Below, piece by piece: positions 12,287 to 60,111 of a stretch of 64,000 bases of DNA. The position numbers were made by a program, and so were the translations under genes. Source of the DNA: Octopus sinensis. Taxonomy: Eukaryota. The DNA lies in assembly GCF_006345805.1 (NCBI RefSeq), contig NC_042997.1:136896001-136960000 (forward strand), written 5' to 3'. Each line of letters begins with the position of its first letter. The stretch's first letter is position 1. Below the pieces are notes generated by a model. That model did no database searches. It was not told the DNA's origin and was given only the letters and a program-made list of their open reading frames with translations.

Positions 12287-12308
12287 ATGCAAAAGCCCTC
12301 CATGAAAA
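12287..12308 (+). other. 21-22 nt exon-like segment (also 55404-55425, 57699-57720, 59990-60011, 61552-61572, 62552-62573)
   Basis: ttctttgaCAG|ATGCAAAAGCyyTmCAGGAAAA|GTAGGA; recognisably similar to the array microexon TGAAAAAAAGCTTAAGCTAGCAAA|GTAC. Confidence 0.4.
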
Positions 12309-15300
12309 GTGTGACTTCCAATTTGAGAAAAGTTTGTTTGTAGTTTCTATCACTTTGTGTTTCATCTGTGTATTGTAAGTATGAAAAACGCTGCATGTTG
12401 TAAGAGGGTCAAGAATTTGAGTGATCTCTGAATTAGTGGTACGTTTGTTTGCTTTTTATGATGCTTTATTTTAACACATATATTTTAGTATCAATTTATG
12501 ATCGAAAAAACTATTATAATTTACTGTTGCGTGCTAGTGTTTACTCATCTCATTACTATTTGATTGCCAGTTAACTATATTATTACTTTACAAAATTGTG
12601 TTCCTTTTCAGCATAGTGAAATTATTATTGAGTTGTTTGTTGGTAATATGTTCAGCACAGTTTTGCTTGTGTGTTTCTGTTGTTGTTTTTCTGTTTGCTT
12701 TCCTTGCAGTGAAAACAGCTTAAGCTAGCAAAGTACAGTAAGTAAGCAGTTTAGTTCTTTGATATAAAATGACCTGTATTGTTGTTTGCAACATGCTTTC
12801 GATATTTGACACACAATCTGTAGGTAAAAAAAACAGAAAGTTGAACTTGAAGAGACAAGAAATAAAAGTCTGGTTGGTACGACCACATTTTTGCCTATTC
12901 ATTTGTTATATACATAGTAAGAATGTTTGTCTTTATTTTCTTAACACATATATTTCAGTATCAATTTATGATTGTCAAAAGTATTGTACTTTACTGTTGC
13001 GTACTAGTGATTGATTGTCAAAAGTATTGTACTTTACTGTTGCGTACTAGTGTTTACTCATCTCATTACTATCTGATTGCTAGTTAACTATATTATTACT
13101 TTATAAAATTGCATTCCCTTTCACCATAGTGAAATTATTATTGAGTTGTTTGTTGGTTATTTGTTGAGCACAGTTTTGTTTGTGTGTTTCTCTTGTTGTT
13201 TTTTTTATTTGGTTTCCTTGCAGTGCAAAAAGCTTAAGCTAGCAAAGCACAGTAAGTAAGCAGTTTAGTTCTTTGATATAAAATGACCTGTATTGTTGTT
13301 TGCAACATGCTTTCAATATTTGACACGGAATCTGTAGGTCAAAGAAACAGATAGTTGGACTTGAAGTGACAGAAGCAATGTCATTCTGGCTGGTACAACC
13401 GCATTTTTGCCTATTTATTATTGAGTTGTGTGTTGGTAATATGTTGAGCACAGTTTTGCTTGTGTGTTTCTCTTGTTTTTTTTTTATTTGGTTTCCTTGC
13501 AGTGAAAAAAGCTTAAGCTAGTAAAGTACAGTAAGTAAGCAGTTCTTTACTATAAAACGACCTGTATTGTTGCTTGCAACATGCTTTCTATCTTTGAGAC
13601 AAAATCTGTAGGTTAAAGACAAAGATAGTTTGATTTGAAGAGACAGAAGCTATGAAATTCTGGTTGGTACGACTGCATTTTTGCCTATTCATTTGTTTTG
13701 AACATGGTGAGAATGTTCGTCTTTATTTTCATAACACATTTTGCTTTATTTTCTTAACACATTAAAAAGTATTATAATTTACTGTTGAGTACTTGTGTTT
13801 ACTCATCTCATTACTATTTGATTGCTACATGCTTTCTATATTTGACACAGAATCTGTAGGTCAAAGAAATAGATAGTTGGACTTGAAAAGACAGAAGCAA
13901 TGAAATTCTGGCTGGTACAACAGCATTTTTGCCTATTTATTATTGAGTGGTTTGTTGGTTATTTATTGAGCACAGTTTTGCCTGTGTCTTTTTGTTGTTT
14001 TTCTGTTTGCTTTCCTTGCAGTGAAAAAAAGCTTAAGCTAGCAAAGAACAGTAAGTAAGCAGTTTAGTTCTTTGATATAAAATGACCTGTATTGTTGTTT
14101 GCAACATGCTTTCGATACTTGACACACAATCTGTAGGTAAAAGAAACAGAAAGTTGGACTTGAAGAGTCACAAGAAATGACATTCTGGTTGGTACGACCG
14201 CATTTTTGCCTATTCATTTGTTATATATGTAGTAAGAATGTTCGTCTTTGTTTTCTTAACACCTTTTGCTTTATTTTCTTAACACGTATATTTTAGTATC
14301 AATTTATGATTGTAAAGATATTGTACTTTACTGTTGCGTACCAGTGTTTACTAATCTCATTACTATTTGATTGCTATTTAACTATATTACTACTTTATAT
14401 AACTCTGTTCCCTTTCAGCATTGTGAAATTATTATTGAGTTGTTTGTTCCTTATTTGTTGAGCACAGTTTTGTTTGTGTGTTTCTGTTGTTGTTTTTCAA
14501 TTTGGTTTCCTTGCAGTGAAAAAAAAGCTTAAGCTAGCAAAGTACTGTAAGTAAGCAGTTTCGTTCTTTGATATAAAATGACCTGTATTGTTGTTTGCAA
14601 CATGCTTTCTATATTTGACACACCATCTGTAGGTAAAAGAAACAGATAGTTGGACTTGAAAGGACAGAAGCAATAAAATTCTGGCTTGTACAACCGCATT
14701 TTTGCCTATTCATTTGCTATATACATAGTAAGAATGTTTGTCTTAATTTTCTTAAAACCTTTGGCTTTATTTTCTTAACACATATATTTTAGTATCAATT
14801 TATGATCGTAAAATGTATTGTAAATGACTGTTGCGTGCTAGTGTTTATTCAACTCATTACTATTTGATTGCTATTTAACTATATTACTACTTTATATAAC
14901 TCTGTTCCCTTTCAGCATTGTGAAATTATTATTGAGTTGTTTGTTCCTTATTTGTTGAGCACAGTTTTGTTTGTGTGTTTCTGTTGTTGTTTTTCAATTT
15001 GGTTTCCTTGCAGTGAAAAAAAAGCTTAAGCTAGCAAAGTACTGTAAGTAAGCAGTTTCGTTCTTTGATATAAAATGACCTGTATTGTTGTTTGCAACAT
15101 GCTTTCTATATTTGACACACATCTGTAGGTAAAAGAAACAGATAGTTGGACTTGAAAGGACAGAAGCAATAAAATTCTGGCTTGTACAACCGCATTTTTG
15201 CCTATTCATTTGCTATATACATAGTAAGAATGTTTGTCTTAATTTTCTTAAAACCTTTGGCTTTATTTTCTTAACACATATATTTTAGTATCAATTTATG

Positions 15301-24642: not shown

Positions 24643-24673
24643 CATTGTGAAATTATTATTGAGTTGTTTGTTG
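24643..24673 (+). other. Representative second microexon candidate (31 nt), followed by a 67 nt mini-intron, in full-length units
   Basis: Acceptor ttgtgttccctttCAG, donor TTG|GTAATA (GTTATT in many units, weaker); 24674-24740 ends at the main TTGCAG acceptor. Confidence 0.3.
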
Positions 24674-24740
24674 GTAATATGTTGAGCACAGTTTTGCTTC
24701 TGTGTTTCTGTTGTTGTTTTTCTGTTTGCTTTCCTTGCAG

Positions 24741-24773
24741 TGAAAAAAAGCTTAAGCTAGCAAAGTACAGTAA
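24741..24773 (+). other. Representative array microexon (24/29/33 nt depending on donor), present in essentially every unit
   Basis: ~45 nt AG-free T/G-rich tract ending ttgctttccttgCAG; exon TGAAAAAAAGCTTAAGCTAGCAAA|GTACA|GTAA|GTAAGC, with consensus GTAAGT at the middle donor. Confidence 0.55.
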
Positions 24774-27700
24774 GTAAGCAGTTTAGTTCTTTGATATAAA
24801 ATGACCTGTATTGTTGTTTGCAACATGCTTTCGATACTTGACACACAATCTGTAGGTAAAAGAAACAGAAAGTTGGACTTGAAGACACAGCAGAAATGAA
24901 ATTCTGGTTGGTACGACCGCATTTTTGCCTATTCATTTGTTATATACATAGGAAGAATGTTTGTCTTTGTTTTCTTAACACCTTTCGCTTTATTTTCTTA
25001 ACACATATATTTTAGTATCAATTTATGATTGTAAAGATATTGTACTTTACTGTTGTGTAATAGTGTTTACTAATCTCATTACTATTTGATTGCTATTTAA
25101 CTATATTATTACTTTATATAACTCTGTTCCTTTTCAGCATTGTGAAATTATTATTGAGTTGTTTGTTGGTTATTTATTTAGCACAGTTTTGCCTGTGTCT
25201 TTTTGTTGTTGTTTTTCTGTTTCCTTTCCTTGCAGTCATAAAAAGCTTAAGCTAGCAAAGTACAGTAAGTAAACAGTTTAGTTCTTTGATATAAAATGAC
25301 CTGTATTGTTGTTTGCAACGTGCTTTCTATATTTGACACACCATCCGTAGGTAAAAGAAACAGATAGTTGGACTTGAAAGGACAGAAGCAACAAAATTGT
25401 GGCTTGTACAACCGCATTTTTGCGTATTCATTTGCTATATACATAGTAAGAATGTTCGTCTTTATTTTCTTAAAACCTTTTGCTTTATTTTCTTAACACA
25501 TATATTTAGTATCAATTTATGATCGTAAAATGTTTTGTAAATGACTGTTGCGTGCTAGTGTTTATTCATCTCTTTACTCTTTGATGCTAGTGACTACTAT
25601 TATTACTTTATAAAAATTGTGTTCCCTTTCAGCATTGTGAAATTATTATTGAGTTGTTTGTTGGTAATATGTTGAGCACAGTTTTGCTTCTGTGTTTCTG
25701 TTGTTGTTTTTCTGTTTGCCTTCCTTGCAGTGAAAAAAAGCTTAAGCTAGCAAAGTACAGTAAGTAAGCAGTTTAGTTCTTTGATATAAAATGACCTGTA
25801 TTGTTGTTTGCAACATGCTTTCGATACTTGACACACAATCTGTAGGTAAAAGAAACAGAAAGTTGAACTTGAAGACACAGCAGAAATGAAATTCTGGTTG
25901 GTACGACCGTATTTTTGCCTATTCATTTGTTATATACATAGGAAGAATGTTTGTCTTTGTTTTCTTAACACCTTTTGCTTTATTTTCTTAACACATATAT
26001 TTTAGTATCAAATTATGCTTGTAAAGATATTGTACTTTACTGTTGTGTACTAGTGTTTACTAATCTCATTACTATCTGATTGCTATTTAACTATATTATT
26101 ACTTTATATAACTCTGTTCCTTTCAGCATTGTGAAATTATTGTTGAGTGTTTGTTTGTTATTTATTGAGCACAATTTTGCCTGTGTCTTTTTGTTGTTTT
26201 TTTTTTCTTTCCTTTCCTTGCAGTCAAAAAAAGCTTAAGCTAGCAAAGTACAGTAAGTAAACAGTTCAGTTCTTTGATATAAAATGACCTGTATTGTTGT
26301 TTGCAACATGCTTTCTATATTTGACACACCATCTGTAGGTAAAAGAAACAGATAGTTGGACTTGAAAGGACAGAAGCAACAAAATTCTGGCTTGTACAAC
26401 CGCATTTTTGCGTATTCATTTGCTATATACATAGTAAGAATGTTCGTCTTTATTTTCTTAAAACCTTTTGCTTTATTTTGTTAACACACATATTTTAGTA
26501 TCAATTTATGATCGTAAAATGTATTGTAAATGACTGTTGCGTGCTAGTGTTTATTCATCTCTTTACTATTTGATTGCTAGTGAACTATATTATTACTTTA
26601 TGAAATTGTGTTCCCTTTCAGCATTGTGAAATTATTATTGAGTTGTTTGTTGGTAATATGTTGAGCACAGTTTTGCTTCTGTGTTTCTGTTGTTGTTTTC
26701 TGTTTGCTTTCCGCAGTCAAAAAAAAGCTTAAGCTAGCAAAGTACAGTAAGTAAGCAGTTTAGTTCTTTGATATAAAATGACCTGTATTGTTGTTTGCAA
26801 CATGCTTTCGATATTTGACACACAATCTGTAGGTAAAAGAAACAGAAAGTTGGACTTCAAGGCACAGCAGAATTGAAATTCTTGTTGGTACGACCGTATT
26901 TTTGCCTATTCATTTGTTATATTATAGTAAGAATGTTCGTCTTTAATTTCTTAACAACTTTTGCTTCATTTTTAACACATATATTTTAGTATCAATTTAT
27001 GATTGTAAAGATATTGTACTTTACTGTTGTGTACTAGTGTTTACTAATCTCATTACTATTTGATTGCTATTTAACTATATTATTACTTTATATAACTCTG
27101 TTCCTTTTCAGCATTGTGAAATTAATATTGAGTTGTTTGTTGGTAATATGTTGAGCACAGTTTTGCTTCTGTGTTTCTGTTGTTGTTTTTTGTGTTTCCT
27201 TTCCTTGCAGTCAAAAAAAGCTTAAGCTAGCAAAGTACAGTAAGTAAACGGTTTAGTTCTTTGATATAAAATGACCTGTATTGTTGTTTGCAACATGTTT
27301 CTATATTGACACACCATCTGTAGGTAAAAGAACAAATAGTTGGAATTGAAAGGACAGAAGCAACAAAATTCTGGCTCGTACAACCGCATTTTTGCCTATT
27401 CATTTGCTATATACATAGTAAGAATGTTCGTCTTTATTTTCTTAAAACCTTTTGCTTTATTTTCTTAACACATATATTTTAGTATCAATTTATGATCGTA
27501 AAATGTATTGTAAATGACTGTTGCGTGCTAGTGTTTATTCATCTCTTTACTATTTGATTGCTAGTTAACTATATTACTACTTTATAAAATTGTGTTCCCT
27601 TTCAGCATTGTGGAATTATTATTGAGTTGTTTGTTGGTTATTTGTTGAGCACAGTTTTGTATGTATGTTTCTCTTGTTGTTTTTTTTATTTGGTTTCCTT

Positions 27701-30700
27701 GCAGTGCAAAAAGCTTAAGCTAGCAAAGTACAGTAAGTAAGCAGTTTAGTTATTTGATATAAAATGTCCTGTATCGTTTGCAACATGCTTCTATATTTGA
27801 CACAGAATCTGTAGGTCAAAGAAAAACAGTAGTTGGACTTGAAAAGACAGAAGGAATGAAATTCTGGCTGTACGACGGCAGTTTTGCCTATTTATTATTG
27901 AGTTGTTTGTTGGTTATTTATTGAGCACAGTTTTGCCTGTGTCTTTTTGTTGTTTTCTCTGTTTGCTTTCCTTGCAGTGAAAAAAAGCGTAAGCTAGCAC
28001 AGTACAGTAAGTAAGCAGTTTAGTTCTTTGGTATAAAATGACCTGTTTTGTTGTTTGCAACATGCTTTCGATATCTGACAACAATCTGTAGGTAAAAGAA
28101 ACAGAAAGTTGGTCTTGAAGAGACAGAAGAAATGAAATTCTTGTTGGTACGACCGCATTTTTGCCTGTTCATTTGTTTATATTCATAGAAGAATGTTTGT
28201 CTTTGTTTTCTTAACACCTTTGCTTTATTTTCTAACACATATATTTTAGTGTCAATTTATGATTGTAAAGATATTGTACTTTACTGTTGTGTACTAGTGT
28301 TTACTAATCTCATTACTATTTGATTGCTATTTAACTATATTAATACTTTATATAACTCTGTTCCTTTTCAGCATTGTGAAATTATTATTGAGTTGTTTGT
28401 TGGTTATTTATTGAGCACAGTTTTGCCTGTGTCTTTTTGTTGTTGTTTTTCTGTTTCCTTTCCTTGCAGTCAAAAAAAGCTTAAGCTAGCAAAGTACAGT
28501 AAGTAAACAGTTTAGTTCTTTGATATAAAATGACCTGTATTGTTGTTTGCAACATGCTTTCTATATCTGACAGACCATTTGTAGGTAAAAGAAACAGATA
28601 GTTGGACTTGAAAGGACAGAAGCAACAAAATTGTGGCTTGTACAACCGCTTTTTTGCGTATTCATTTGCTATATACATAGTAAGAATGTTCGTCTTTATT
28701 TTCTTAAAACCTTTTGCTTTATTTTCTTAACACATATATTTTAGTACCAATTTATGATCGTAAAATGTATTGTAAATGACTGTTGCGTGCTAGTGTTTAT
28801 TCATCTCTTTACTATTTGATTGCTAGTTAACTATATTATTACTTTATAAAATTGTGTTCCTTTTCAGCATTGTGAAATTATTATTGAGTTGTTTGTTGGT
28901 TATTTGTTGAGCACAGTTTTGTATGTATGTTTCTCTTGTTGTTTTTTTTATTTGGTTTCCTTGCAGTGCAAAAAGCTTAAGCTAGCAAAGTACAGTAAGT
29001 AAGCAGTTTAGTTCTTTGATATAAAATGTCCTGTATTGTTTGCAACATGCTTTCTATATTTGACACAGAATCTGTAGGTCAAAGAAACAGATAGTTGGAC
29101 TTGAAAAGACAGAAGGAATGAAATTCTGGCTGGTACAACGGCATTTTTGCCTAGTTATTATTGAGTTGTTTGTTGGTTATTTATTGAGCACAGTTTTGCC
29201 TGTGTCTTTTTGTTGTTTTTCTGTTTGCTTTCCTTGCAGTGAAAAAAAGCTTAAGCTAGCAAAGTATAGTAAGTAAGCAGTTTAGTTCTTTGATATAAAA
29301 TGACCTGTTTTGTTGTTTGCAACATGCTTTCGATATTTGACACACAATCTGTAGGTAAAAGAAACAGAAAGTTGGTCTTGAAGAGACAGAAGAAATGAAA
29401 TTCTTGTTGGTACGACCGCATTTTTGCCTATTCATTTGTTATATACATAGGAAGAATGTTTGTCTTTGTTTTCTTAACACCTTTTGCTTTATTTTCTTAA
29501 CACATATATTTTAGTATCAATTTATGATTGTAAAGATATTGTACTTTACTGTTGTGTACTAGTGTTTACTAATCTCATTACTATTTGATTGCTATTTAAC
29601 TATATTAATACTTTATATAACTCTGTTCCTTTTCAGCATTGTGAAATTATTATTGAGTTGTTTGTTGGTTATTTATTGAGCACAGTTTTGCCTATGTCTT
29701 TTTCTTGTTGTTTTTCTGTTTCCTTTCCTTGCAGTGAAAAAAAGCTTAAGCTAGCAAAGTACAGTAAGTAAACAGTTTAGTTTTTTGATATAAAATGACC
29801 TGTATTGTTGTTTGCAACATGCTTTCTATATCTGACACACCATCTGTAGGTAATAGAAACAGATAGTTGGACTTGAAAGGACAGAAGCAACAAAATTGTG
29901 GCTTGTACAACCGCATTTTTGCCTATTCATTTGCTATATACATAGTAAGAATGTTCGTCTTTATTTCTTAAAACCTTTTGCTTTATTTTCTTAACACATA
30001 TATTTTAGTATCAATTTATGATCGTAAAATGTATTGTAAATGACTGTTGCGTGCTAGTGTTTATTCATCTCTTACTATTTGATTGCTAGTGAACTATATT
30101 ATTACTTTATAAAATTGTGTTCCCTTTCAGCATTGTGAAATTATTATTGAGTTGTTTGTTGGTAATATGTTGAGCACAGTTTTGCTTCTGTGTTTCTGTT
30201 GTTGTTTTCTGTTTGCCTTCCTTGCAGTGAAAAAAAGCTTAAGCTAGCAAAGTACAGTAAGTAAGCAGTTTAGTTCTTTGATATAAAATGACTTGTATTG
30301 TTGTTTGCAACATGCTTTCGATGCTTGACACACAATCTGTAGGTAAAAGAAACAGAAGTTGGACTTGAAGGCACAGCAGAAATGAAATTCTGGTTAGTAT
30401 GACCGCATTTTTGCCTATTCATTTGTTATATACATAGGAAGAATGTTTGTCTTTGTTTCTTAACACCTTTTGCTTTATTTTCTTAACACATATATTTTAG
30501 TATCAATTTATGATTTTAAAGATATTGTACTTTACTGTTGTGTACTAGTGTTTACTAATCTCATTACTATTTGATTGCTATTTAACTATATTATTGCTTT
30601 ATATAACTCTGTTCCTTTTCAGCATTGTGAAATTATTATTGAGTTGTTTGTTATTTATTGAGCACAATTTTGCCTGTGTCTTTTTGTTGTTGTTTTTCTG

Positions 30701-36700: not shown

Positions 36701-39700
36701 TCTTTACTATTTGATTGCTAGTTAACTATATTACTACTTTATAAAATTGTGTTCCCTTTCAGCATTGTGGAATTATTATTGAGTTGTTTGGTTGTTATTG
36801 TTGAGCACAGTTTTGTATGTATGTTTCTCTTGTTGTTTTTTTATTTGGTTTCCTTGCAGTGCAAAAAGCTTAAGCTAGCAAAGTACAGTAAGTAAGCAGT
36901 TTAGTTATTTGATATAAAATGTCCTGTATCGTTTGCAACATGCTTTCTATATTTGACACAGAATCTGTAGGTCAAAGAAACAGATAGTTGGACTTGAAAA
37001 GACAGAAGGAATGAAATTCTGGCTGGTACGACGGCAGTTTTGCCTATTTATTATTGAGTTGTTTGTTGGTTATTTATTGAGCACAGTTTTGCCTGTGTCT
37101 TTTTGTTGTTTTTCTGTTTGCTTTCCTTGCAGTGAAAAAAAGCGTAAGCTAGCACAGTACAGTAAGTAAGCAGTTTAGTTCTTTGGTATAAAATGACCTG
37201 TTTTGTTGTTTGCAACATGCTTTCGATATCTGACAAACAATCTGTAGGTAAAAGAAACAGAAAGTTGGTCTTGAAGAGACAGAAGAAATGAAATTCTTGT
37301 TGGTACGACCGCATTTTTGCCTGTTCATTTGTTATATTCATAGAAAGAATGTTTGTCTTTGTTTTCTTAACACCTTTTGCTTTATTTTCTTAACACATAT
37401 ATTTTAGTGTCAATTTATGATTGTAAAGATATTGTACTTTACTGTTGTGTACTAGTGTTTACTAATCTCATTACTATTTGATTGCTATTTAACTATATTA
37501 ATACTTTATATAACTCTGTTCCTTTTCAGCATTGTGAAATTATTATTGAGTTGTTTGTTGGTTATTTATTGAGCACAGTTTTGCCTGTGTCTTTTTGTTG
37601 TTGTTTTTCTGTTTCCTTTCCTTGCAGTCAAAAAAAGCTTAAGCTAGCAAAGTACAGTAAGTAAACAGTTTAGTTCTTTGATATAAAATGACCTGTATTG
37701 TTGTTTGCAACATGCTTTCTATATCTGACAGACCATTTGTAGGTAAAAGAAACAGATAGTTGGACTTGAAAGGACAGAAGCAACAAAATTGTGGCTTGTA
37801 CAACCGTTTTGCGTATTCATTTGCTATATACATAGTAAGAATGTTCGTCTTTATTTTCTTAAAACCTTTTGCTTTATTTTCTTAACACATATATTTTAGT
37901 ACCAATTTATGATCGTAAAATGTATTGTAAATGACTGTTGCGTGCTAGTGTTTATTCATCTCTTTACTATTGATGCAGTAGTAACTATATTATTACTTTA
38001 TAAAATTGTGTTCCTTTTCAGCATTGTGAAATTATTATTGAGTTGTTTGTTGGTTATTTGTTGAGCACAGTTTTGTATGTATGTTTCTCTTGTTGTTTTT
38101 TTTATTTGGTTTCCTTGCAGTGCAAAAAGCTTAAGCTAGCAAAGTACAGTAAGTAAGCAGTTTAGTTCTTTGATATAAAATGTCCTGTATTGTTTGCAAC
38201 ATGCTTTCTATATTTGACACAGAATCTGTAGGTCAAAGAAACAGATAGTTGGACTTGAAAAGACAGAAGGAATGAAATTCTGGCTGGTACAACGGCATTT
38301 TTGCCTAGTTATTATTGAGTTGTTTGTTGGTTATTTATTGAGCACAGTTTTGCCTGTGTCTTTTTGTTGTTTTTCTGTTTGCTTTCCTTGCAGTGAAAAA
38401 AGCTTAAGCTAGCAAAGTATAGTAAGTAAGCAGTTTAGTTCTTTGATATAAAATGACCTGTTTGTTGTTTGCAACATGCTTTCGATATTTGACACACAAT
38501 CTGTAGGTAAAAGAAACAGAAAGTTGGTCTTGAAGAGACAGAAGAAATGAAATTCTTGTTGGTACGACCGCATTTTTGCCTATTCATTTGTTATATACAT
38601 AGGAAGAATGTTTGTCTTTGTTTTCTTAACACCTTTTGCTTTATTTTCTTAACACATATATTTTAGTATCAATTTATGATTGTAAAGATATTGTACTTTA
38701 CTGTTGTGTACTAGTGTTTACTAATCTCATTACTTTGATTGCTATTTAACTATATTAATACTTTATATAACTCTGTTCCTTTTCAGCATTGTGAAATTAT
38801 TATTGAGTTGTTTGTTGGTTATTTATTGAGCACAGTTTTGCCTATGTCTTTTTCTTGTTGTTTTTCTGTTTCCTTTCCTTGCAGTGAAAAAAAGCTTAAG
38901 CTAGCAAAGTACAGTAAGTAAACAGTTTAGTTTTTTGATATAAAATGACCTGTATTGTTGTTTGCAACATGCTTTCTATATCTGACACACCATCTGTAGG
39001 TAATAGAAACAGATAGTTGGACTTGAAAGGACAGAAGCAACAAAATTGTGGCTTGTACAACCGCATTTTTGCCTATTCATTTGCTATATACATAGTAAGA
39101 ATGTTCGTCTTTATTTTCTTAAAACCTTTTGCTTTATTTTCTTAACACATATATTTTAGTATCAATTTATGATCGTAAAATGTATTGTAAATGACTGTTG
39201 CGTGCTAGTGTTTATTCATCTCTTTACTATTTGATTGCTAGTGAACTATATTATTACTTTATAAAATTGTGTTCCCTTTCAGCATTGTGAAATTATTATT
39301 GAGTTGTTTGTTGGTAATATGTTGAGCACAGTTTTGCTTCTGTGTTTCTGTTGTTGTTTTCTGTTTGCCTTCCTTGCAGTGAAAAAAAGCTTAAGCTAGC
39401 AAAGTACAGTAAGTAAGCAGTTTAGTTCTTTGATATAAAATGACTTGTATTGTTGTTTGCAACATGCTTTCGATGCTTGACACACAATCTGTAGGTAAAA
39501 GAAACAGAAAGTTGGACTTGAAGGCACAGCAGAAATGAAATTCTGGTTAGTATGACCGCATTTTTGCCTATTCATTTGTTATATACATAGGAAGAATGTT
39601 TGTCTTTGTTTTCTTAACACCTTTTGCTTTATTTTCTTAACACATATATTTTAGTATCAATTTATGATTTTAAAGATATTGTACTTTACTGTTGTGTACT

Positions 39701-42700
39701 AGTGTTTACTAATCTCATTACTATTTGATTGCTATTTAACTATATTATTGCTTTATATAACTCTGTTCCTTTTCAGCATTGTGAAATTATTATTGAGTTG
39801 TTTGTTATTTATTGAGCACAATTTTGCCTGTGTCTTTTTGTTGTTGTTTTTTCTGTTTCCTTTCCTTGCAGTCAAAAAAAGCTTTAGCTAGCAAAGTACA
39901 GTAAGTAAGCAGTTTAGTTCTTTGATATAAAATGACCTGTATTGTTGTTTGCAACATGCTTTCGATATTTGACACACAATCTGTAGGTAAAAGAAACAGA
40001 AAGTTGGTCTTGAAGAGACAGAAGAAATGAAATTCTTGTTGGTGCGACCGCATTTTTGCCTATTCATTTGTTATATATATAGTAAGAATGTTCGTCTTTA
40101 ATTTCTTAACAACTTTTGCTTCATTTTCTTAACACATATATTTTAGTATCAATTTATGATTGTAAAGATATTGTACTTTACTGTTGTGTACTAGTGTTTA
40201 CTAATCTCATTACTATTTGATTGCTATTTAACTATATTATTACTTATATAACTCTGTTCCTTTTCAGCATTGTGAAATTAATATTGAGTTGTTTGTTGGT
40301 AATATGTTGAGCACAGTTTTGCTTCTGTGTTTCTGTTGTTGTTTTTTGTGTTTCCTCCTTGCAGAGCACAAAAAAAGCTTAAGCTAGCAAAGTACAGTAA
40401 GTAAACGGTTTAGTTCTTTGATATAAAATGACCTGTATTGTTGTTTGCAACATGCTTTCTATATCTGACACACCATCTGTAGGTAAAAGAAAACAGATAG
40501 TTGGAATTGAAAGGACAGAAGCAACAAAATTGTGGCTTGTACAACCGCATTTTTGCCTATTCATTTGCTATATACATAGTAAGAATGTTCGTCTTTATTT
40601 CTTAAAACCTTTTGCTTTATTTTCTTAACACATATATTTTAGTATCAATTTACGATCGTAAAATGTATTGTAAATGACTGTTGCGTGCTAGTGTTTATTC
40701 ATCTCTTTACTATTTTATTGCTAGTGAACTATATTATTACTTTATAAAATTGTGTGTCCCTTTCAGCATTGTGAAATTATTATTGAGTTGTTTGTTGGTA
40801 ATATGTTGAGCACAGTTTTGCTTCTGTTCTGTTGTTGTGTTTTTCTGTTTGCCTTCCTTGCAGTGAAAAAAAGCTTAAGCTAGCAAAGTACAGTAAGTAA
40901 GCAGTTTAGTTCTTTGATATAAATGACTTGTATTGTTGTTTGCAACATGCTTTCGATGCTTGACACACAATCTGTAGGTAAAAGAAACAGAAAGTTGGAC
41001 TTGAAGGCACAGCAGAAATGAAAATTCTGGTTAGTATGACCGCATTTTTGCCTATTCATTTGTTATATACATAGGAAGAATGTTTGTCTTTGTTTTCTTA
41101 ACACCTTTTGCTTTATTTTCTTAACACATATATTTTAGTATCAATTTATGATTTTAAAGATATTGTACTTTACTGTTGTGTACTAGTGTTTACTAATCTC
41201 ATTACTATTTGATTGCTATTTAACTATATTATTGCTTTATATAACTCTGTTCCTTTTCAGCATTGTGAAATTATTATTGAGTTGTTTGTTATTTATTGAG
41301 CACAATTTTGCCTGTGTCTTTTTGTTGTTGTTTTTTGTGTTTCCTTTCCTTGCAGTCAAAAAAAGCTTAAGCTAGCGAAGTACAGTAAGTAAACAGTTCA
41401 GTTCTTTGTTATAAAATGACCTGTATTGTTGTTTGCAACATGCTTTCTATATTTGACACACCATCTGTAGGTAAAAGAAACAGATAGTTGGAATTGAAAG
41501 GACAGAAGCAACAAAATTGTGGCTTGTACAACCGCATTTTTGCCTATTCATTTGCTATATACATAGTAAGAATGTTCGTCTTTATTTTCTTAAAACCTTT
41601 TGCTTTATGTTCTTAACACATATATTTTAGTATCAATTTATGATCGTAAAATGTATTGTAAATGACGGTTGCATGCTAGTGTTTATCCATCTCTTTACTA
41701 TTTGATTGCTAGTTAACTATATTATTACTTTATAAAATTGTGTCCCTTTCAGCATTGTGGAATTATTATTGAGTTGTTTGTTGGTTAGTTGTTGAGCACA
41801 GTTTTGTATGTATGTTCTCTCTTGTTTTTTTTTTATTTGTTTCCTTGCAGTGCAAAAAGCTTAAGCTAGCAAAGTACAGTAAGTAAGCAGTTTAGTTATT
41901 TGATATAAAATGTCCTGTATTGTTTGCAACATGCTTTCTATATTGACACAGAATCTGTAGGTCAAAGAAACTGATAGTTGGACTTGAAAAGACAGAAGGA
42001 ATGAAATTCGGCTGCTATACAACGGCATTTTTGCCTTTATTATTGAGTTGTTTGTTGGTTATTTATTGAGCACAGTTTTGCCTGTGTCTTTTTGTTGTTG
42101 TGTACTAGTGTTTACTAATCTCATTACTATTTGATTACTATTTAACTATATTATTGCTTTATATAACTCTGTTCCTTTTCAGCATTGTGAAATTATTATT
42201 GAGTTGTTTGTTATTTATTGAGCACAATTTTGCCTGTGTCTTTTTGTTGTTGTTTTTTCTGTTTCCTTTCCTTGCAGTCAAAAAAAGCTTAAGCTAGCAA
42301 AGTACAGTAAGTAAACAGTTCAGTTCTTTGTTATAAAATGACCTGTATTGTTGTTTGCAACATGCTTTCTATATTTGACACACCATCTGTAGGTAAAAGA
42401 AACAGATAGTTGGAATTGAAAGGACAGAAGCAACAAAATTATGGCTTGTACAACCGCATTTTTGCCTATTCATTTGCTATATACATAGTAAGAATGTTCG
42501 TCTTTATTTTCTTAAAACCTTTTGCCTTATTTTCTTAACACATATATTTTAGTATCAATTTATGATCGTAAAATGTATTGTAAATGACGGTTGCATGCTA
42601 GTGTTTATCCATCTCTTTACTATTTGATTGCTAGTTAACTATATTATTACTTTATAAAATTGTGTTCCCTTTCAGCATTGTGGAGTTATTATTGAGTTGT

Positions 42701-43319
42701 TTGTTGGTTAGTTGTTGAGCACAGTTTTGTATGTATGTTTCTCTTGTTGTTTTTTTTATTTGGTTTCCTTGCAGTGCAAAAAGCTTAAGCTAGCAAAGTA
42801 CAGTAAGTAAGCAGTTTAGTTATTTGATATAAAATGTCCTGTATTGTTTGCAACATGCTTTCTATATTTGACACAGAATCTGTAGGTCAAAGAAACAGAT
42901 AGTTGGACTTGAAAAGACAGAAGGAATGAAATTCTGGCTGGTACGACGGCAGTTTTGCCTATTTATTATTGAGTTGTTTGTTGGTTATTTATTGAGCACA
43001 GTTTTGCCTGTGTCTTTTTGTTGTTTTTCTGTTTGCTTTCCTTGCAGTGAAAAAAAGCTTAAGCTAGCAAAGTACAGTAAGTAAGCAGTTTAGTTCTTTG
43101 ATATAAAATGACCTGTTTTGTTGTTTGCAACATGCTTTCGATATTTGACACACAATCTGTAGGTAAAAGAAACAGAAAGTTGGTCTTGAAGAGACAGAAG
43201 AAATGAAATTCTTGTTGGTGCGACCGCATTTTTGCCTATTCATTTGTTATATACATAGGAAGAATGTTTGTCTTTGTTTTCTTAACACCTTTTGCTTTAT
43301 TTTCTTAACACATATATTT

Positions 43320-43402
43320 TAGTATCAATTTATGATTGTAAAGATATTGTACTTTACTGTTGTGTACTAGTGTTTACTAATCTCATTACTATTTGATTGC
43401 TA
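43320..43402 (+). ncRNA. Representative ~85 nt stem-loop (structured RNA / pre-miRNA-like candidate) in each full-length unit
   Basis: Hand-folded: TAGTATCAA/TTGATTGCTA basal stem, GATT-GTAAA/TTTAC-T-AATC, TATT/AGTG, GTAC/GTAC, ~11 nt loop; unit-to-unit changes fall mostly in bulges and the loop. Confidence 0.3.
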
Positions 43403-43590
43403 TTTAACTATATTAATACTTTATATAACTCTGTTCCTTTTCAGCATTGTGAAATTATTATTAAGTTGTTGTTGGTTATTTATTGAGCACAGTTTTGCCT
43501 ATGTCTTTTTTGTTGTTGTTTTCTGTTTCCTTTCCTTGCAGTGAAAAAAGCTTAAGCTAGCAAAGTACAGTAAGTAAACAGTTTAGTTTT

Positions 43591-43751
43591 TTGATATAAA
43601 ATGACCTGTATTGTTGTTTGCAACATGCTTTCTATATCTGACACACCATCTGTAGGTAAAAGAAACAGATAGTTGGACTTGAAAGGACAGAAGCAACAAA
43701 ATTGTGGCTTGTACAACCGCATTTTTGCCTATTCATTTGCTATATACATAG
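43591..43751 (+). ncRNA. Representative H/ACA-like RNA candidate (hairpin - H box - hairpin - ACA+3) repeated in array units
   Basis: Two hairpins, each lower stem/internal loop/upper stem; H box ACACCA at 43643-43648, 14 nt after the first internal loop; ACA at 43746-43748 lies farther from hairpin 2 than is canonical. No target established. Confidence 0.35.
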
Positions 43752-46700
43752 TAAGAATGTTCGTCTTTATTTTCTTAAAACCTTTTGCTTTATTTTCTTA
43801 ACACATATATTTTAGTATCAATTTATGATCGTAAAATGTATTGTAAATGACTGTTGCGTGCTAGTGTTTATTCATCTCTTTACTATTTGATTGCTAGTGA
43901 ACTATATTATTACTTTATAAAATTGTGTTCCCTTTCAGCATTGTGAAATTATTGAGTTGTTTGTTGGTAATATGTTGAGCACAGTTTTGCTTCTGTGTTT
44001 CTGTTGTTGTTTTTTGTTTGCCTTCCTTGCAGTGAAAAAAAGCTTAAGCTAGCAAAGTACAGTAAGTAAGCAGTTTAGTTCTTTGATATAAAATGACTTG
44101 TATTGTTGTTTGCAACATGCTTTCGATGCTTGACACACAATCTGTAGGTAAAAGAAACAGAAAGTTGGACTTGAAGGCACAGCAGAAATGAAATTCTGGT
44201 TAGTATGACCGCATTTTTGCCTATTCATTTGTTATATACATAGGAAGAATGTTTGTCTTTGTTTTCTTAACACCTTTTGCTTTATTTTCTTAACACATAT
44301 ATTTTAGTATCAATTTATGATTTTAAAGATATTGTACTTTACTGTTGTGTACTAGTGTTTACTAATCTCATTACTATTTGATTGCTATTTAACTATATTA
44401 TTGCTTTATATAACTCTGTTCCTTTTCAGCATTGTGAAATTATTATTGAGTTGTTTGTTATTTATTGAGCACAATTTTGCCTGTGTCTTTTTGTTGTTGT
44501 TTTTTGTGTTTCCTTTCCTTGCAGTCAAAAAAAGCTTAAGCTAGCAAAGTACAGTAAGTAAACAGTTCAGTTCTTTGTTATAAAATGACCTGTATTGTTG
44601 TTTGCAACATGCTTTCTATATTTGACACACCATCTGTAGGTAAAAGAAACAGATAGTTGGAATTGAAAGGACAGAAGCAACAAAATTGTGGCTTGTACAA
44701 CCGCATTTTTGCCTATTCATTTGCTATATACATAGTAAGAATGTTCGTCTTTATTTTCTTAAAACCTTTTGCTTTATGTTCTAAACATATATTTTAGTAT
44801 CAATTTATGATCGTAAAATGTATTGTAAATGACGGTTGCATGCTAGTGTTTATCCATCTCTTTACTATTTGATTGCTAGTTAACTAATTATTATTTATTA
44901 TAAATTGTGTTCCCTTTCAGCATTGTGGAATTATTGAGTTGTTTGTTGGTTAGTTGTTGAGCACAGTTTTGTATGTATGTTTCTCTTGTTTTTTTTATTT
45001 GGTTTCCTTGCAGTGCAAAAAGCTTAAGCTAGCAAAGTACAGTAAGTAAGCAGTTTAGTTTGATATATAAAATGTCCTGTATTGTTTGCAACATGCTTTC
45101 TATATTTGACACAGAATCTGTAGGTCAAAGAAACTGATAGTTGGACTTGAAAAGACAGAAGGAATGAAATTCTGGCTGCTACAACGGCATTTTTGCCTAT
45201 TTATTATTGAGTTGTTTGTTGGTTATTTATTGAGCACAGTTTTGCCTGTGTCTTTTTGTTGTTGTGTACTAGTGTTTACTAATCTCATTACTATTTGATT
45301 ACTATTTAACTATATTATTGCTTTATATAACTCTGTTCCTTTTCAGCATTGTGAAATTATTATTGAGTTGTTTGTTATTTATTGAGCACAATTTTGCCTG
45401 TGTCTTTTTGTTGTTGTTTTTTCTGTTTCCTTTCCTTGCAGTCAAAAAAAGCTTAAGCTAGCAAAGTACAGTAAGTAAACAGTTCAGTTCTTTGTTATAA
45501 AATGACCTGTATTGTTGTTTGCAACATGCTTTCTATATTTGACACATCATCTGTAGGTAAAAGAAACAGATAGTTGGAATTGAAAGGACAGAAGCAACAA
45601 AATTATGGCTTGTACAACCGCATTTTTGCCTATTCATTTGCTATATACATAGTAAGAATGTTCGTCTTTATTTTCTTAAAACCTTTTGCCTTATTTTCTT
45701 AACACATATATTTTAGTATCAATTTATGATCGTAAAATGTATTGTAAATGACGGTTGCATGCTAGTGTTTATCCATCTCTTTACTATTTGATTGCTAGTT
45801 AACTATATTATTACTTTATAAAATTGTGTTCCCTTTCAGCATTGTGGAGTTATTATTGAGTTGTTTGTTGGTTAGTTGTTGAGCACAGTTTTGTATGTAT
45901 GTTTCTCTTGTTGTTTTTTTTATTTGGTTTCCTTGCAGTGCAAAAAGCTTAAGCTAGCAAAGTACAGTAAGTAAGCAGTTTAGTTATTTGATATAAAATG
46001 TCCTGTATTGTTTGCAACATGCTTTCTATATTTGACACAGAATCTGTAGGTCAAAGAAACTGATAGTTGGACTTGAAAAGACAGAAGGAATGAAATTCTG
46101 GCTTGTGCAACCGCATTTTTGCCTATTTATTATTGAGTTGTTTGTTGGTTATTTATTGAGCACAGTTTTGCCTGTGTCTTTTTGTTGTTTTTCTGTTTGC
46201 TTTCCTTGCAGTGAAAAAAAGCTTAAGCTAGCATAGTACAGTAAGTAAGCAGTTTAGTTCTTTGATATAAAATGACCTGTTTTGTTGTTTGCAACATACT
46301 TTCGATATTTGACACACAATCTGTAGGTAAAAGAAACAGAAAGTTGGTCTTGAAGAGACAGAAGAAATGAAATTCTTGTTGGTACGACCGCATTTTTGCC
46401 TATTCATTTGTTATATACATAGGAAGAATGTTTGTCTTTGTTTTCTTAACACCTTTTGCTTTATTTTCTTAACACATATATTTTAGTATCAATTTATGAT
46501 TGTAAAGATATTGTACTTTACTGTTGTGTACTAGTGTTTACTAATCTCATTACTATTTGATTGCTATTTAACTATATTAATACTTTATATAACTCTGTTC
46601 CTTTTCAGCATTGTGAAATTATTATTGAGTTGTTTGTTGGTTATTTATTGAGCACAGTTTTGCCTGTGTCTTTTTGTTGTTGTTTTTCTGTATGCTTTCC

Positions 46701-52700: not shown

Positions 52701-53282
52701 GAAATTCTCGTTGGTACGACCCCATTTTTGCCTATTCATTTATTATATACATAGTAAGAATGTACGTTTATATTTTCTTAACGTCTTTTGCTTTATTTTC
52801 TTAACACATATATTTTAGTATCAATTTATGATTGTAAAAATATCGTACTTTACTGTTGCGTACTAGTGTTTACTCATCTCATTACTGTTTGATTTCTATT
52901 TAACTATATTATTACTCTATAAAATTGTGTTCCCTTTCAGCATTGTGAAATTATTATTGAGTTGTTTGTTGGTAATATGTTGAGCACAGTTTTGCTTGTG
53001 TGTTTTTGTTGTTTTTCTGTTTGCTTTTCTTGCAGTGAAAAAAGCTGAAGCTAGCAAAGTAGTTCTTTGATATAAAATTACCTGTATTGTTGTTTGCAAC
53101 ATGCTTTATATATTTGACACACAATCTGTAGGTGAAAGAAACAGATAGTTGGACTTGAAAGGACAGAAGCAATGAAATTCTGGCCGGTACAACCGCATTT
53201 TTGCCTATTCATTTGCTATATACACAGGAAGAATGTTCGTCTTTATTTTCTTAAAACCTTTTCCTTTATTTTCTTTACACAT

Positions 53283-56200
53283 ATATTTTAGTATCAATTT
53301 ATGATCGTAAAAAGTATTGTAATTTACTGTTGCGTACTAGTGTTTACTCATCTCATTACTATTTGATTGCTTGTCAACTATATTGTTACTTTATAAAATT
53401 GTGTTCCCTTTCAGCATTGTGAAATTATTATTGAGTTGTTTGTTGGTTATTTGTTGAGCACAGTTTTGTTTGTGTGTTTATGTTGTTTTTCTGTTTGCTT
53501 TCCTTGCAGTGAAAAAAGCTTAAGCTAGCAAAGTACAGTAAGTTAGCAGTTTAGTTCTTTGATGTAAGATGACCTGCATTGTTTAGTTCTTTGATATAAA
53601 ATGACCTGTATTTTTGTTTGCAACATGCTTTCTATATTTGACACACAATCTGTAGGTAAAAGAAATTGATAGTTGAACTTGAAGAGACAGAAGCAATAAA
53701 ATTCTGGCTTGTACGACTGCATTTTTGCCTATTCATTTGATATGAACATAGAAAGAATGTTCCCCTTTATTTCTTAACACATTTTGCTTTATTCTGAACA
53801 CGTATATTTGAGTATCAATTTATGATCATAAAAAGTATTGTAAGTTACTGTTGCGTACTAGTGTTTACGCATCTCATTACTATTTGATTGCTAGTTAACT
53901 ATGTTATTACTTTATAAAATTGTGTTCCCTTTCAGTGTAGTGAAATTATTATTGAGTTGTTTGTTGGTAATTTGATGAGTACAGTGTTGCCTGTTTGTTT
54001 CTGTTGTTTTTCTGTTTGCTTTCTTTGCAGTGAAAAAAGCTTAAGTAAGCAGTTTAGTTCTTTATATAAAATGACCTGAATTGTTGTTTGCAACATGCTT
54101 CATGTATTTGACACACAATCTGTAGGTAAAAGAAACAGATAGTTTTCTTGAGGAGACAGAAGCAATGAAATTCTGGCTGGTAGGACCGCATTTTTGCATA
54201 TTCACTAACATTCAAAGCCACTTTAATATGTATTGACAGAAGCAAGTATTACATGAAAGCAAAAGACAATTTTTTTCTTAAACAAAAGTGGTATTGTTTA
54301 ACAGTTTTCGCATTAGCATGTTTCTCAGTTTCCATCTTTGCCAGATACAAAATGATGACATGAAGAATCCTAGATAGTGTCATTCAGATAAGAAAACTTT
54401 ATTGTATTCAGCTGAAAGTAATAGCGTGTATGTTTTCTGAGTATTTTATTCACTGACAGACGTGCTGAATGCTGGAAGAAAATTGAGTATGTAAGGAATC
54501 AACTTTTTTGTCTTTGCCCCAATTCCTGTCTATGGCTAACATCTCAAGACTTTTCTTGTGTTTAATTTCCTGTGCAACTGATTTTATGCAGATTGTTGTT
54601 TTCTTCTTTCACTGTGGCATTTTTGAATCTTGATATGAACATAGTAAGAATTTTCCCCTATCGTAACAATTGAAATTAATAATTGCAGTTGTGTTTGTTA
54701 CTTAAAAAAATGTTTACTTGCAATGTAGGGAAACTAAATCGGAAATAGTATAGTAGCTTTTTGAGTAATGTTATGGGCAGTGTTTTGGAAAATGTGCTTT
54801 GTTCGTTTCTCACCAGATATTCAGATAATGAAATTGGAAAGTGTCTTGATACATGTGTAAAATTGAAGATAGCAGCTATGCGATTTACGAGGTAGGTCAT
54901 TGTTTCCGCATATGATGGTAAAGAGAATAACATTTTAGCATGTCTGTGTAGAGGTCAACTGTGAATGTAAGAATTGTTTCTTGTGTGTAGAAACTACGTA
55001 CTTTTACTGTGCATGCATATGTTTGTATGTTTCTGTCATTGGCAGATGTGATGACATGAAGAGGATTGGATAAGACAACAGCACTAAGATAAGCCTTATT
55101 ACTTCAATTCTGTTTAGTGGTTTTTCTGTAGATATTTGGATGAAGATTATGCTAAATGTAATGTTTAAATTTGATTATTTGGTAAGCATGGAAAATGCTG
55201 GAGATAAGTAATTGCATAGAGAGTTGATGATATTTTGTGTTGGTTGCAAACATTTCTCTTCGTAGGTTTTGGAATTATTGAAAAATGCTCTGTAAGTGCT
55301 TACAGTTACCTACCGTATTACTGTAATGTTAAATTTTAAAAGATTGATTGGATAAATTTAAGGCCGAACTGTTTGTTTTTTTATGCATGTTATTCTTTGA
55401 CAGATGCAAAAGCTCTACAGGAAAAGTAGGACTTCCAATAAGATAAGAGAAAAGTTTGTTTGTAGTTATATAACTTTGTTTCATCTGTGTGTTGTATGTA
55501 TGAAAAACGCTGCACGTTGTAAGAGGGTCAAGAGTTTGAGTGTTCTCTGAATAAGTGGTACGTTTTGTTTTCTTTTTATGATGCTTCATTTTCTTAACAC
55601 ATATTTTAGTATCAATTTATGATCGAAAAAAAGTATTGTAATTTTCTGTTGTGTACTAAGGTTTACTTATCTCATTACTATTTGATTTCTTGTTAGCTAT
55701 GTTATTACTTTATAAAATTGTGTTCCCTTTCAGCATTGTGAAATTATTATTGAGTTGTTTGTTGGTAATTTGTTGAGCACAGTTTTGTTTGTGTGTTTCT
55801 GTTGTTGTTCTTCTGTTCGCTTTCCTTGCAGTGAAAAAAGCTAAAGCTAGTAAAAAGTACAGTAAGTAAGCAGTTTAGTTTTTTGATGGAAGATGACCTG
55901 TATTTTTGTTTGCAACATGCTTTCTATATTTGACACACAATCTGTAGGTAAAAGAAATTGATAGTTGAACTTGAAGAGACAGAAGCAATAAAATTCTGGC
56001 TTGTACGACTGCATTTTTGCCTATTCATTTGATATGAACATAGAAAGAATGTTCCCCTTTATTTTCTTAACACATTTTGCTTTATTTTCTGAACACGTAT
56101 ATTTGAGTATCAATTTATGATCATAAAAAGTATTGTAAGTTACTGTTGCGTACTAGTGTTTACGCATCTCATTACTATTTGATTGCTAGTTAACTATGTT

Positions 56201-60107: not shown

Positions 60108-60111
60108 TTAA

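What the first reader, a model, noticed from the sequence alone, without database searches (positions are those of the whole stretch)
12470..54210. A 42 kb satellite whose monomer is an exon-intron cassette: candidate amplified host array for intronic small RNAs
About 91 tandem units each keep a pyrimidine tract, TTGCAG acceptor, microexon and GTAAGT donor on one strand, and the intervening sequence holds two candidate structured RNAs. A short exon plus one RNA-bearing intron per repeat is the established layout of the C19MC miRNA host and the SNORD115/116 arrays. Finding it at this copy number in an invertebrate-like genome, with its source cassette still visible on both flanks, would be unusual.
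Basis: partly seen in the sequence, partly recalled or inferred. Interest (0 to 1): 0.9.

Follow-up and report, generated by a model that had tools for sequence, protein, structure and literature searches.

The report
Octopus satellite built from a microexon cassette

Summary
The array is real. It holds 90 head-to-tail units plus one truncated end copy at 12,462-54,204, all on the + strand. Unit lengths are about 493 bp (67 units), 274 bp (13) and 429 bp (5). Every unit keeps the acceptor AG (TTGCAG in 88/90) and 89/90 keep GTAAGT, flanking a 27-30 nt exon. The genome matches Octopus sinensis by assembly statistics, and the exon occurs nowhere else in its 2.72 Gb.

The array is an expansion of one segment of a 2.3 kb tandem unit that is still visible on both flanks. 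That unit carries 8 exon-like cassettes, partly overlapping, on the + strand.

On a tree of the 90 units, GTAAGT is the only six-column window with no change, and TTGCAG has one change inside the most variable zone. Decoy splice motifs and the exon body vary at the background rate. A chance cassette is rare (0-1 in 123 kb).

The small-RNA part fails every test available:
- no Rfam hit;
- no C box or CUGA;
- best hairpin -15 kcal/mol per 90 nt;
- the consensus folds worse than shuffles;
- no conserved consensus structure.

Spliced products cannot code.

Best reading: a young amplification of an exon-intron piece of a non-coding multi-exon unit, probably still spliced. Transcription is untested. 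Interest is moderate to low.

The parts
11031..11298 (+). Oldest, diverged copy of the cassette (about 71% identity). It keeps TTGCAG, a microexon and a shifted donor (AG|GTAACA).
11303..12461 (+). Front part of an old 2.3 kb parent unit (75-81% identity to the 3' flank units). It runs straight into the array.
12462..54204 (+). The array: 90 cassettes plus one truncated terminal copy. It is built by multi-unit block duplication: 11.4 kb blocks at 97.9% identity and 6.6 kb blocks at 97.4%. The best register is 20 units.
14022..14050 (+). Example microexon (29 nt, TGAAAAAAAGCTTAAGCTAGCAAAGAACA). The acceptor AG is at 14020-14021 and the GTAAGT donor at 14051-14056.
   Evidence: (sequence)
24653..45205 (+). 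The largest internal segmental duplication: 24,653-36,066 against 33,808-45,205, offset 9,155 bp, 97.9% identity.
54205..56506 (+). Complete 2.3 kb parent unit. It has 8 exon-like cassettes, partly overlapping, on + against 1 on - (background 1.27 per 2.3 kb per strand). They include a full cassette (exon 55,832-55,861) and a cassette with a truncated exon (56,324-56,338).
56503..58805 (+). Second 2.3 kb parent unit, 99.2% identical to the first.
58802..60111 (+). Third parent unit, cut off after 1.3 kb (95% identity).
61213..62658 (+). Degraded fragments of further parent units (69-83% identity).

Best explanation
The locus (window about 11.0-62.7 kb) is a tandem series of 2.3 kb units. Each looks like a run of short non-coding exons on the + strand.

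Inside one unit, a 0.5 kb piece was expanded to about 91 copies. That piece holds a 28-29 nt microexon, its long pyrimidine tract with acceptor and GTAAGT donor, and the adjoining intron. The expansion ran by unequal exchange, first unit by unit and later in blocks of 2-11 kb (shown).

The result is a single-locus, satellite-like array whose monomer is a bona fide exon-intron cassette (shown). Because the splice sites are the least variable positions of the monomer, the array is most likely transcribed on the + strand and its microexons recognised by the spliceosome (inferred). That would give a non-coding RNA made of chained 29 nt repeats, plus about 90 excised introns of about 460 or 240 nt (inferred).

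The introns carry no recognisable miRNA, snoRNA or other structured RNA (shown, within the limits of sequence-only tests). Whether the RNA has a function is open. My estimate is that the array is a recent by-product of repeat instability in a non-coding transcription unit, not a dedicated small-RNA factory.
For: - Array and unit census.
- The hierarchy of 2.3 kb units, and the array starting and ending exactly at the cassette part of one unit.
- Block duplications at 96-98% identity; adjacent units (0.88) are less alike than units 20 apart (0.93).
- Single locus: the 27-nt exon+donor pattern with up to 3 mismatches has 87 hits in 2.72 Gb, all in this array.
- A cassette is unlikely by chance: 0 strict and 1 relaxed in 123 kb.
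- The + strand of the 2.3 kb unit is enriched in exon-like cassettes (8 against 1; background 1.27).
- Splice-site coldness: there are 804 parsimony events over 495 columns (1.62 per column). GTAAGT has 0 events and is the only invariant six-column run. CCTTGCAG has 2 events in 8 columns inside a zone running at 2.4 per column. The positions just outside (acceptor -7 to -12, exon +2 to +4, exon -2) carry 4-8 events each. Decoy motifs GTAAGA (302-307) and TTTCAG (483-488) are not spared.
- Acceptor and a donor are retained even in the copy that is 71% identical.
- Non-coding: the exon length varies between 28 and 29 nt. Chained exons give at most 20 codons. The conceptual splice of the parent unit has stops in all frames.
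- No small-RNA signal.
Against: - No transcript evidence of any kind was available.
- Recent (singleton) variants are not significantly depleted at the splice sites (0 and 1 against about 2.4 expected each, P about 0.09-0.3).
- Rare variants have a transition/transversion ratio of 0.5 and no strand asymmetry. Some may therefore be long-read assembly errors, and there is no mutational footprint of germline transcription.
- Column rates are overdispersed (variance/mean 2.0). The donor lies in a generally cold zone (100-215), so its invariance alone is worth only about P 0.01.
- No processed retrocopy with an exon-exon junction exists in the genome.
- Selection on each of 90 redundant sites would be weak.
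Confidence: 0.5

Rival explanations
1. It is a plain, functionless satellite. An exon-bearing fragment was amplified recently, and its splice motifs survive only because there has not been enough time to lose them. The array is silent, or its transcripts are irrelevant.
For: - The block duplicates are 96-98% identical, and the median identity of each unit to its nearest relative is 99.4%.
- Singleton variants show no significant depletion at the splice sites.
- Column rates are heterogeneous, with low-complexity T/G- and TA-rich zones the most variable.
- The surroundings are rich in LINE fragments and no coding gene was seen within +-20 kb.
Against: - The two hexamers named in advance are both among the coldest windows: the donor is unique among 490, and the acceptor has 1 event in the hottest zone.
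- Two decoy splice motifs in the same monomer vary freely.
- The sites persist in copies down to 71% identity.
Confidence: 0.3
2. One reading: a host gene whose about 90 introns each release a small RNA (miRNA, snoRNA, or an unstructured class such as piRNA or other intron-derived RNA).
For: - The repeated short non-coding exon plus intron layout matches C19MC and SNORD115/116 hosts (named from established knowledge).
- The splice sites are constrained while the exon body is not, as in snoRNA host genes.
- The first 100 nt or so of the intron is the least variable long stretch (0.8-1.0 against 1.62 events per column).
Against: - No Rfam hit even at E <= 1.
- No C box within one mismatch and no CUGA on the + strand.
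- No hairpin better than -15.4 kcal/mol per 90 nt.
- The consensus is less stable than its shuffles.
- No conserved consensus structure.
- The cold intron zone is not significant (P about 0.1).
- 13 units lack 212 nt of intron and 5 lack about 65 nt.
Confidence: 0.1
3. It is a spliced-leader (SL) RNA gene array. Each unit would be a small RNA gene whose 5' mini-exon is donated in trans to mRNAs.
For: - Tandem units of about 0.5 kb with a short exon followed by a strong GU donor are typical of SL gene arrays (established knowledge).
- The exon sequence is absent from the rest of the genome.
- The cold zone 100-215 has roughly the size of an SL RNA.
Against: - A conserved 3' splice site with a 45-nt pyrimidine tract sits directly upstream of the exon.
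- The exon body evolves at the background rate and three of its first four bases are hypervariable, whereas SL exons are near-invariant.
- There is no RAU(3-6)GR Sm site anywhere in the unit.
- No Rfam SL family matches.
- I know of no report of SL trans-splicing in cephalopods. The literature search turned up nothing pointing to one, though I did not open those papers.
Confidence: 0.02
4. Copy number and fine structure are partly an assembly artefact of a long-read assembly across a repeat.
For: - Rare variants have Ts/Tv = 0.5, as expected from random error rather than biological mutation.
- The assembly is a scaffolded long-read draft, by the statistics in PMC10700109.
Against: - There are no Ns in the window.
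- The three unit-length classes and the nested block duplications form an ordered structure.
- The unique flanks join cleanly to parent units.
Confidence: 0.08

Closest known systems
C19MC (primate chromosome 19 miRNA cluster) and its non-coding host transcript
   Same: Tens of tandem units on one strand, each with a short non-coding exon and an intron. It is lineage-specific and grew by recent amplification.
   Different: Each C19MC intron carries a pre-miRNA hairpin, which is the conserved element. Here no hairpain of miRNA grade exists (best -15.4 kcal/mol per 90 nt) and no conserved structure. The units here are four to five times shorter.
SNORD116 / SNORD115 arrays in the SNURF-SNRPN/SNHG14 host (also SNORD113/114 in MEG8)
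   Same: Repeated exon-intron units. The host exons are poorly conserved while the splice sites are kept.
   Different: The defining C/D boxes (RUGAUGA ... CUGA with a terminal stem) are absent from the + strand. There is no Rfam snoRNA hit.
Spliced-leader RNA gene arrays (nematodes, flatworms, tunicates, cnidarians)
   Same: Tandem units of about 0.3-1 kb, each with a 20-50 nt exon followed by a GU donor. The exon is absent elsewhere in the genome.
   Different: There is a conserved upstream acceptor, a variable exon and no Sm site. The phylum is not known to trans-splice.
Locus-specific macrosatellites and tandem segmental amplifications of genic segments (e.g. LPA kringle-IV-2 exon pairs, NBPF Olduvai exon doublets, repeat-bearing lncRNA loci such as FIRRE/DXZ4)
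   Same: A single locus with a higher-order or block structure, amplifying a piece that contains exon(s) with their splice sites, and with copy number probably variable.
   Different: The coding examples keep reading frames. Here the exon is 28-29 nt, its length varies, and it cannot code. No transcript is known for it.

Membership tests
Intronic miRNA host array (C19MC type) | Tandem units, each with a short non-coding exon and one intron, all on one strand | tested here: met
   90 units on the + strand only, with splice sites in 89-90 of 90
Intronic miRNA host array (C19MC type) | A pre-miRNA hairpin (about 60-80 nt, long stem, clearly more stable than shuffles) in each intron | tested here: not met
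   The best single hairpin is -15.4 kcal/mol per 90 nt. No + strand window has z < -1.6. The consensus has z = +1.6
Intronic miRNA host array (C19MC type) | The small-RNA segment is conserved above the rest of the unit, with structure-preserving changes | tested here: not met
   RNAalifold energies are -2 to -8 kcal/mol, with SCI 0.2-0.6. The coldest intron stretch is not significant
Intronic miRNA host array (C19MC type) | Mature small RNAs detected from each unit | not testable with these tools
   No small-RNA data were available
C/D snoRNA host array (SNORD115/116 type) | C box RUGAUGA and D box CUGA brought together by a terminal stem inside the intron | tested here: not met
   No C box within 1 mismatch and no CTGA on the + strand of the consensus. 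No Rfam hit
Spliced-leader RNA gene array | Short 5' exon followed by a GU donor, with the genes in a tandem array | tested here: met
   A 27-30 nt exon plus GTAAGT in 89/90 units
Spliced-leader RNA gene array | Sm-binding site RAU(3-6)GR downstream of the donor | tested here: not met
   The regex finds none in the consensus unit
Spliced-leader RNA gene array | A leader exon that is near-invariant among copies and starts at a transcription start, not at a 3' splice site | tested here: not met
   The exon body has 48 events in 29 columns, which is background. Exon bases 2-4 carry 6-8 events each (base 1 has one). A conserved TTGCAG with a 43-53 nt AG-free tract lies directly upstream
Classical satellite DNA | Head-to-tail monomers with higher-order or block structure | tested here: met
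Classical satellite DNA | Many loci or chromosomal domains (centromeric or subtelomeric), with thousands of copies | tested here: not met
   All 87 pattern hits in 2.72 Gb lie in this one array. There is one solitary partial relative on contig 2
Classical satellite DNA | No position-specific constraint related to gene expression signals | tested here: inconclusive
   The splice hexamers are the coldest windows (P 0.002 and 0.01-0.03), but singletons are not depleted and rates are overdispersed
Coding micro-exon genes / exon-repeat proteins | Exon lengths in multiples of three (or frame-preserving sets) and an open frame through the chained exons | tested here: not met
   Exons are 28 or 29 nt, and the longest ORF in any frame of the chained exons is 20 codons

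The most novel reading that the evidence does not exclude
The array is an expressed octopus non-coding gene whose mature RNA is assembled by splicing up to about 90 near-identical 28-29 nt microexons. That would be a repeat RNA made by the spliceosome rather than encoded contiguously. Each exon carries an A7 run and a 10-nt palindrome (AGCUUAAGCU), which lets neighbouring exons pair into a regular string of short hairpins. Such an RNA could act as a multivalent scaffold or sponge. Alternatively, the excised introns could be the product, as an unstructured small-RNA class. Purifying selection on the splice sites would be its footprint.
Probability: 0.15. Interest if true: 0.65.

Novelty: new member of a known kind. 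Interest (0 to 1): 0.35.

Why it matters
If the array is only a young amplification of an exon-bearing fragment, it is one more locus-specific tandem repeat in a repeat-rich cephalopod genome. It would then matter mainly for annotation, because gene predictors and RNA-seq aligners will produce chains of spurious or multi-mapping microexons here.

If it is transcribed and spliced, as the invariant splice signals hint, it would be an invertebrate example of a repeated-exon non-coding gene that arose very recently. The parent units are still alongside, so it would be a clean system for asking how host-gene-like arrays begin and whether the cargo or the scaffold comes first. The question can be settled with existing public octopus RNA-seq and Iso-Seq data.

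Tried and rejected
- Rfam at gathering score on the whole window, and at E <= 1 on 54,000-58,900: nothing.
- tRNA/tmRNA scan: nothing.
- Folding of the consensus, sliding windows on both strands, a single-hairpin scan and RNAalifold with column shuffles: no credible structure.
- C/D box and Sm-site patterns: absent.
- Coding readings: stops in all frames.
- The longest reverse-strand ORF of the array, searched against 5.8 billion proteins to reach other octopus assemblies or transcriptomes: no hit.
- A spliced retrocopy sought through the exon-exon junction pattern in the whole genome: none.
- Exact 27-mer in metagenome contigs: none.
- A dispersed-repeat (SINE/LINE tail) origin for the acceptor region: only one other copy in the genome, so not a family.
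- Transcription-associated mutational asymmetry among rare variants: none, and the Ts/Tv of 0.5 warns of assembly noise.
- The G+T skew as a mark of a long transcription unit: it is confined to the repeat locus itself.
- An exon-versus-intron conservation contrast between old and young 2.3 kb units: uninformative, because the well-aligned part is uniformly conserved.
- Literature searches for a cephalopod satellite of this kind, for repeated-microexon lncRNA hosts, and for spliced leaders in molluscs: the titles and abstracts pointed to nothing relevant and I opened none of these papers.
- The octopus miRNA paper: its main text mentions no tandem, piRNA or lncRNA clusters, and the one supplementary file I opened (part 1 of 11) holds only k-mer conservation tables.
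Full report
**Source.** The window is G000 contig 1, 136,896,001-136,960,000, from a genome of 2,719,151,902 bases in 13,516 contigs. A published table gives exactly these figures (13,516 scaffolds, 2,719.2 Mb) for the chromosome-scale Octopus sinensis assembly GCA_006345805.1 (PMC10700109). I therefore treat the source as O. sinensis. No relatives of this genome are reachable with the tools, so no cross-species comparison was possible.

**Is the array there?** Yes.
- Tandem Repeats Finder reports periods of 491-496 and 269-277 from 12.97 to 54.2 kb.
- A 15-nt anchor inside the putative exon, allowing up to 3 mismatches, occurs 90 times between 12.7 and 53.5 kb. It occurs twice more at 55,841 and 58,138, and never on the reverse strand.
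- Unit lengths fall into three classes: about 493 bp (67 units), about 274 bp (13 units, lacking consensus 284-495) and about 429 bp (5 units).
- A truncated 91st cassette closes the array at about 54,026-54,204.
- The acceptor AG is present in 90/90 units (TTGCAG 88, TTGTAG 1, CCGCAG 1). GTAAGT is present in 89/90; the unit at 52,945 has lost it by deletion. The exon is 27-30 nt, mostly 29 or 28 because an A-run varies in length.
- An AG-free, T/G-rich tract of 43-53 nt precedes every acceptor.
- In 123 kb of neighbouring non-array sequence (both strands), the combination of pyrimidine tract, YAG, 15-80 nt and GTAAGT occurs zero times, and a relaxed version once. The monomer's exon-like look is therefore not a chance pairing of motifs.

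**Where did it come from?** The array is nested in a larger repeat.
- A 2.3 kb unit occurs at 54,210-56,506, at 56,503-58,805 (99.2% identical) and at 58,802-60,111 (95%, cut short). Degraded pieces lie at 61.2-62.7 kb.
- An older copy upstream, at 11,303-13,415 (75-81%), is preceded by a still older cassette at 11,031-11,298 (about 71%).
- Each intact 2.3 kb unit ends with two adjacent cassettes, one full and one with a shortened exon.
- The 42 kb array begins exactly where the cassette part of the old unit begins (12,462). It ends with the shortened cassette, immediately before the next unit starts (54,205). So one unit had its cassette part expanded from 2 to about 91 copies.
- The 2.3 kb unit carries 8 exon-like cassettes, partly overlapping, on the + strand against 1 on the - strand. 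The local background is 1.27 per 2.3 kb per strand.
- A conceptual splice of its exons has stops in all frames.
- The surroundings (+-20 kb) hold LINE reverse-transcriptase and endonuclease fragments and microsatellites, and I saw no coding gene.
- The G+T excess of the + strand is confined to the repeat locus.

**How did it grow?** Mean pairwise identity of units is 0.90. Adjacent units (0.88) are less alike than units 20 apart (0.93), and a unit's nearest relative is most often 20 or 12 units away, at a median identity of 99.4%. Long off-diagonal alignments show an 11.4 kb block duplicated at 97.9% identity, a 6.6 kb block at 97.4%, and 2-4.5 kb blocks at about 96%. This is the pattern of unequal exchange, first of single units and then of multi-unit blocks.

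**Is it unique?** The 27-nt exon+donor pattern with up to 3 mismatches has 87 matches in the whole genome, all in this array. The segment upstream of the acceptor has one further relative. It is a fragment of about 200 nt on contig 2 (25,532,575-25,532,780), 82-92% identical. Its homology fades through the exon region and it ends in an A18 run. It looks like a retroposed copy, but its direction of descent could not be settled, and it is not a dispersed family.

**Are the splice sites protected?** I aligned all 90 units, built a tree and counted parsimony changes per column.
- There are 804 events over 495 columns: mean 1.62, 32% of columns unchanged, variance/mean 2.0.
- GTAAGT (columns 121-126) has 0 events. 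It is the longest invariant run of the monomer and the only six-column window with no variation (empirical P about 0.002).
- TTGCAG (86-91) has 1 event (empirical P 0.03 by events, 0.012 by diversity), although it lies in the most variable zone (27-96, about 2.4 events per column).
- The positions just outside carry 4-8 events each: acceptor -7 to -12, exon +2 to +4, and exon -2.
- The exon body is at background (48 events in 29 columns).
- Two decoy motifs in the same monomer, GTAAGA at 302-307 and TTTCAG at 483-488, vary freely.
- A second invariant run, TAGGT at 204-208, coincides with another donor-like site (AG|GTAAAA).
- The acceptor and a usable donor survive in all flank cassettes, including the copy that is 71% identical.

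**Caveats on that result.**
- Singletons alone are not significantly depleted.
- The donor sits in a generally cold zone (100-215, about 0.8 events per column).
- Rare variants have Ts/Tv = 0.5 and no strand asymmetry, so some may be assembly errors.

The sites look constrained.

**Is there an RNA in the intron?** Every available test is negative.
- Rfam finds nothing at gathering score in the window and nothing at E <= 1 in the flank units. There are no tRNAs.
- The consensus unit folds worse than 95 of 100 shuffles (z = +1.6).
- Among 80- and 110-nt windows on both strands, the + strand never goes below z = -1.6. The few low-z windows on the - strand are 5-9 bp stems of -8 to -15 kcal/mol.
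- The best single hairpin anywhere is -15.4 kcal/mol in 90 nt, far from a pre-miRNA.
- There is no C box within one mismatch and no CUGA on the + strand, and no Sm site.
- RNAalifold on ten diverse units gives consensus energies of -2 to -8 kcal/mol per 100 nt and structure conservation indices of 0.2-0.6.
- The least variable long stretch is the 3' part of the exon plus the first 90 nt or so of the intron, but its deficit is not significant (P about 0.1).
- Thirteen units lack 212 nt of intron and five lack about 65 nt.

**What would the product be?** Chained microexons cannot code: the longest ORF is 20 codons in any frame and the exon length varies. Each exon holds an A7 run and the palindrome AGCUUAAGCU, and eight chained exons fold into a string of 10-bp hairpins (-52.7 kcal/mol). 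However, the palindrome is broken without compensation in several subfamilies, so it does not look constrained. No processed copy with an exon-exon junction exists in the genome.

**Conclusion.**
- This is an amplified exon-intron cassette from a non-coding multi-exon unit, and its splice signals appear protected, which suggests it is still spliced.
- The feature that defines C19MC or SNORD115/116 arrays, a small RNA in each intron, is not detectable.
- I rate the [quoted passage not shown] reading at 0.5, a silent satellite at 0.3, a small-RNA host at 0.1, an SL array at 0.02, and a partly artefactual assembly at 0.08. The last can coexist with any of the others.
- Existing octopus RNA-seq, Iso-Seq and small-RNA data mapped with multi-mapping allowed would decide among these within a day.

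Noticed in passing
L021:4575-4800 (G000 contig 2, about 25,532,575-25,532,800): This is the only relative of the array outside the locus. It is a fragment of about 200 nt covering the 3' end of the intron, the pyrimidine tract and a diverged exon region (82-92% identity), and it ends in an A18 tail. It looks like a retroposed copy of an unspliced RNA from the locus, or of a common source. No target-site duplication was evident.
   Followed up: partly
window 60481-60831 (- strand): A 116-aa open frame with a serine/acidic-rich start lies in the sequence that interrupts the third 2.3 kb unit. From memory it resembles the start of a transposase. It has no Pfam hit at E <= 0.01, so it is unconfirmed.
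   Followed up: partly
window 12969-13052: A perfect 43-bp tandem duplication (2.0 copies, 100% identity) lies inside the second array unit. A 23-bp internal duplication (CTTTATTTTCTTAACAC...) recurs in most full-length units.
   Followed up: no
L022-L025 (G000 contig 1, 20 kb on either side of the window): The flanks are dominated by LINE fragments (RVT_1, endonuclease-reverse transcriptase, and a PHD-like finger after the RT). The upstream flank has several kb of (TA/TG)n-type microsatellite. No coding exon was recognised.
   Followed up: partly
window 54817-54891 and 11531-11607: One exon-like segment of the 2.3 kb unit keeps an open frame of about 24 codons in both the young and the old copy, despite many differences (YSDNEIGKCLDTCVKLKIAAMRFT against YLGDEIGKRLDVYVRLKITAMKFN). 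The next exon has stops in the young units but is open in one old copy. This could be a remnant of an ancient coding gene or chance.
   Followed up: no
window 12462-54204: Rare variants among units have a transition/transversion ratio of 0.5 (105 against 212). That is the random expectation and is unusual for real mutations, which suggests residual long-read errors in this repeat.
   Followed up: partly
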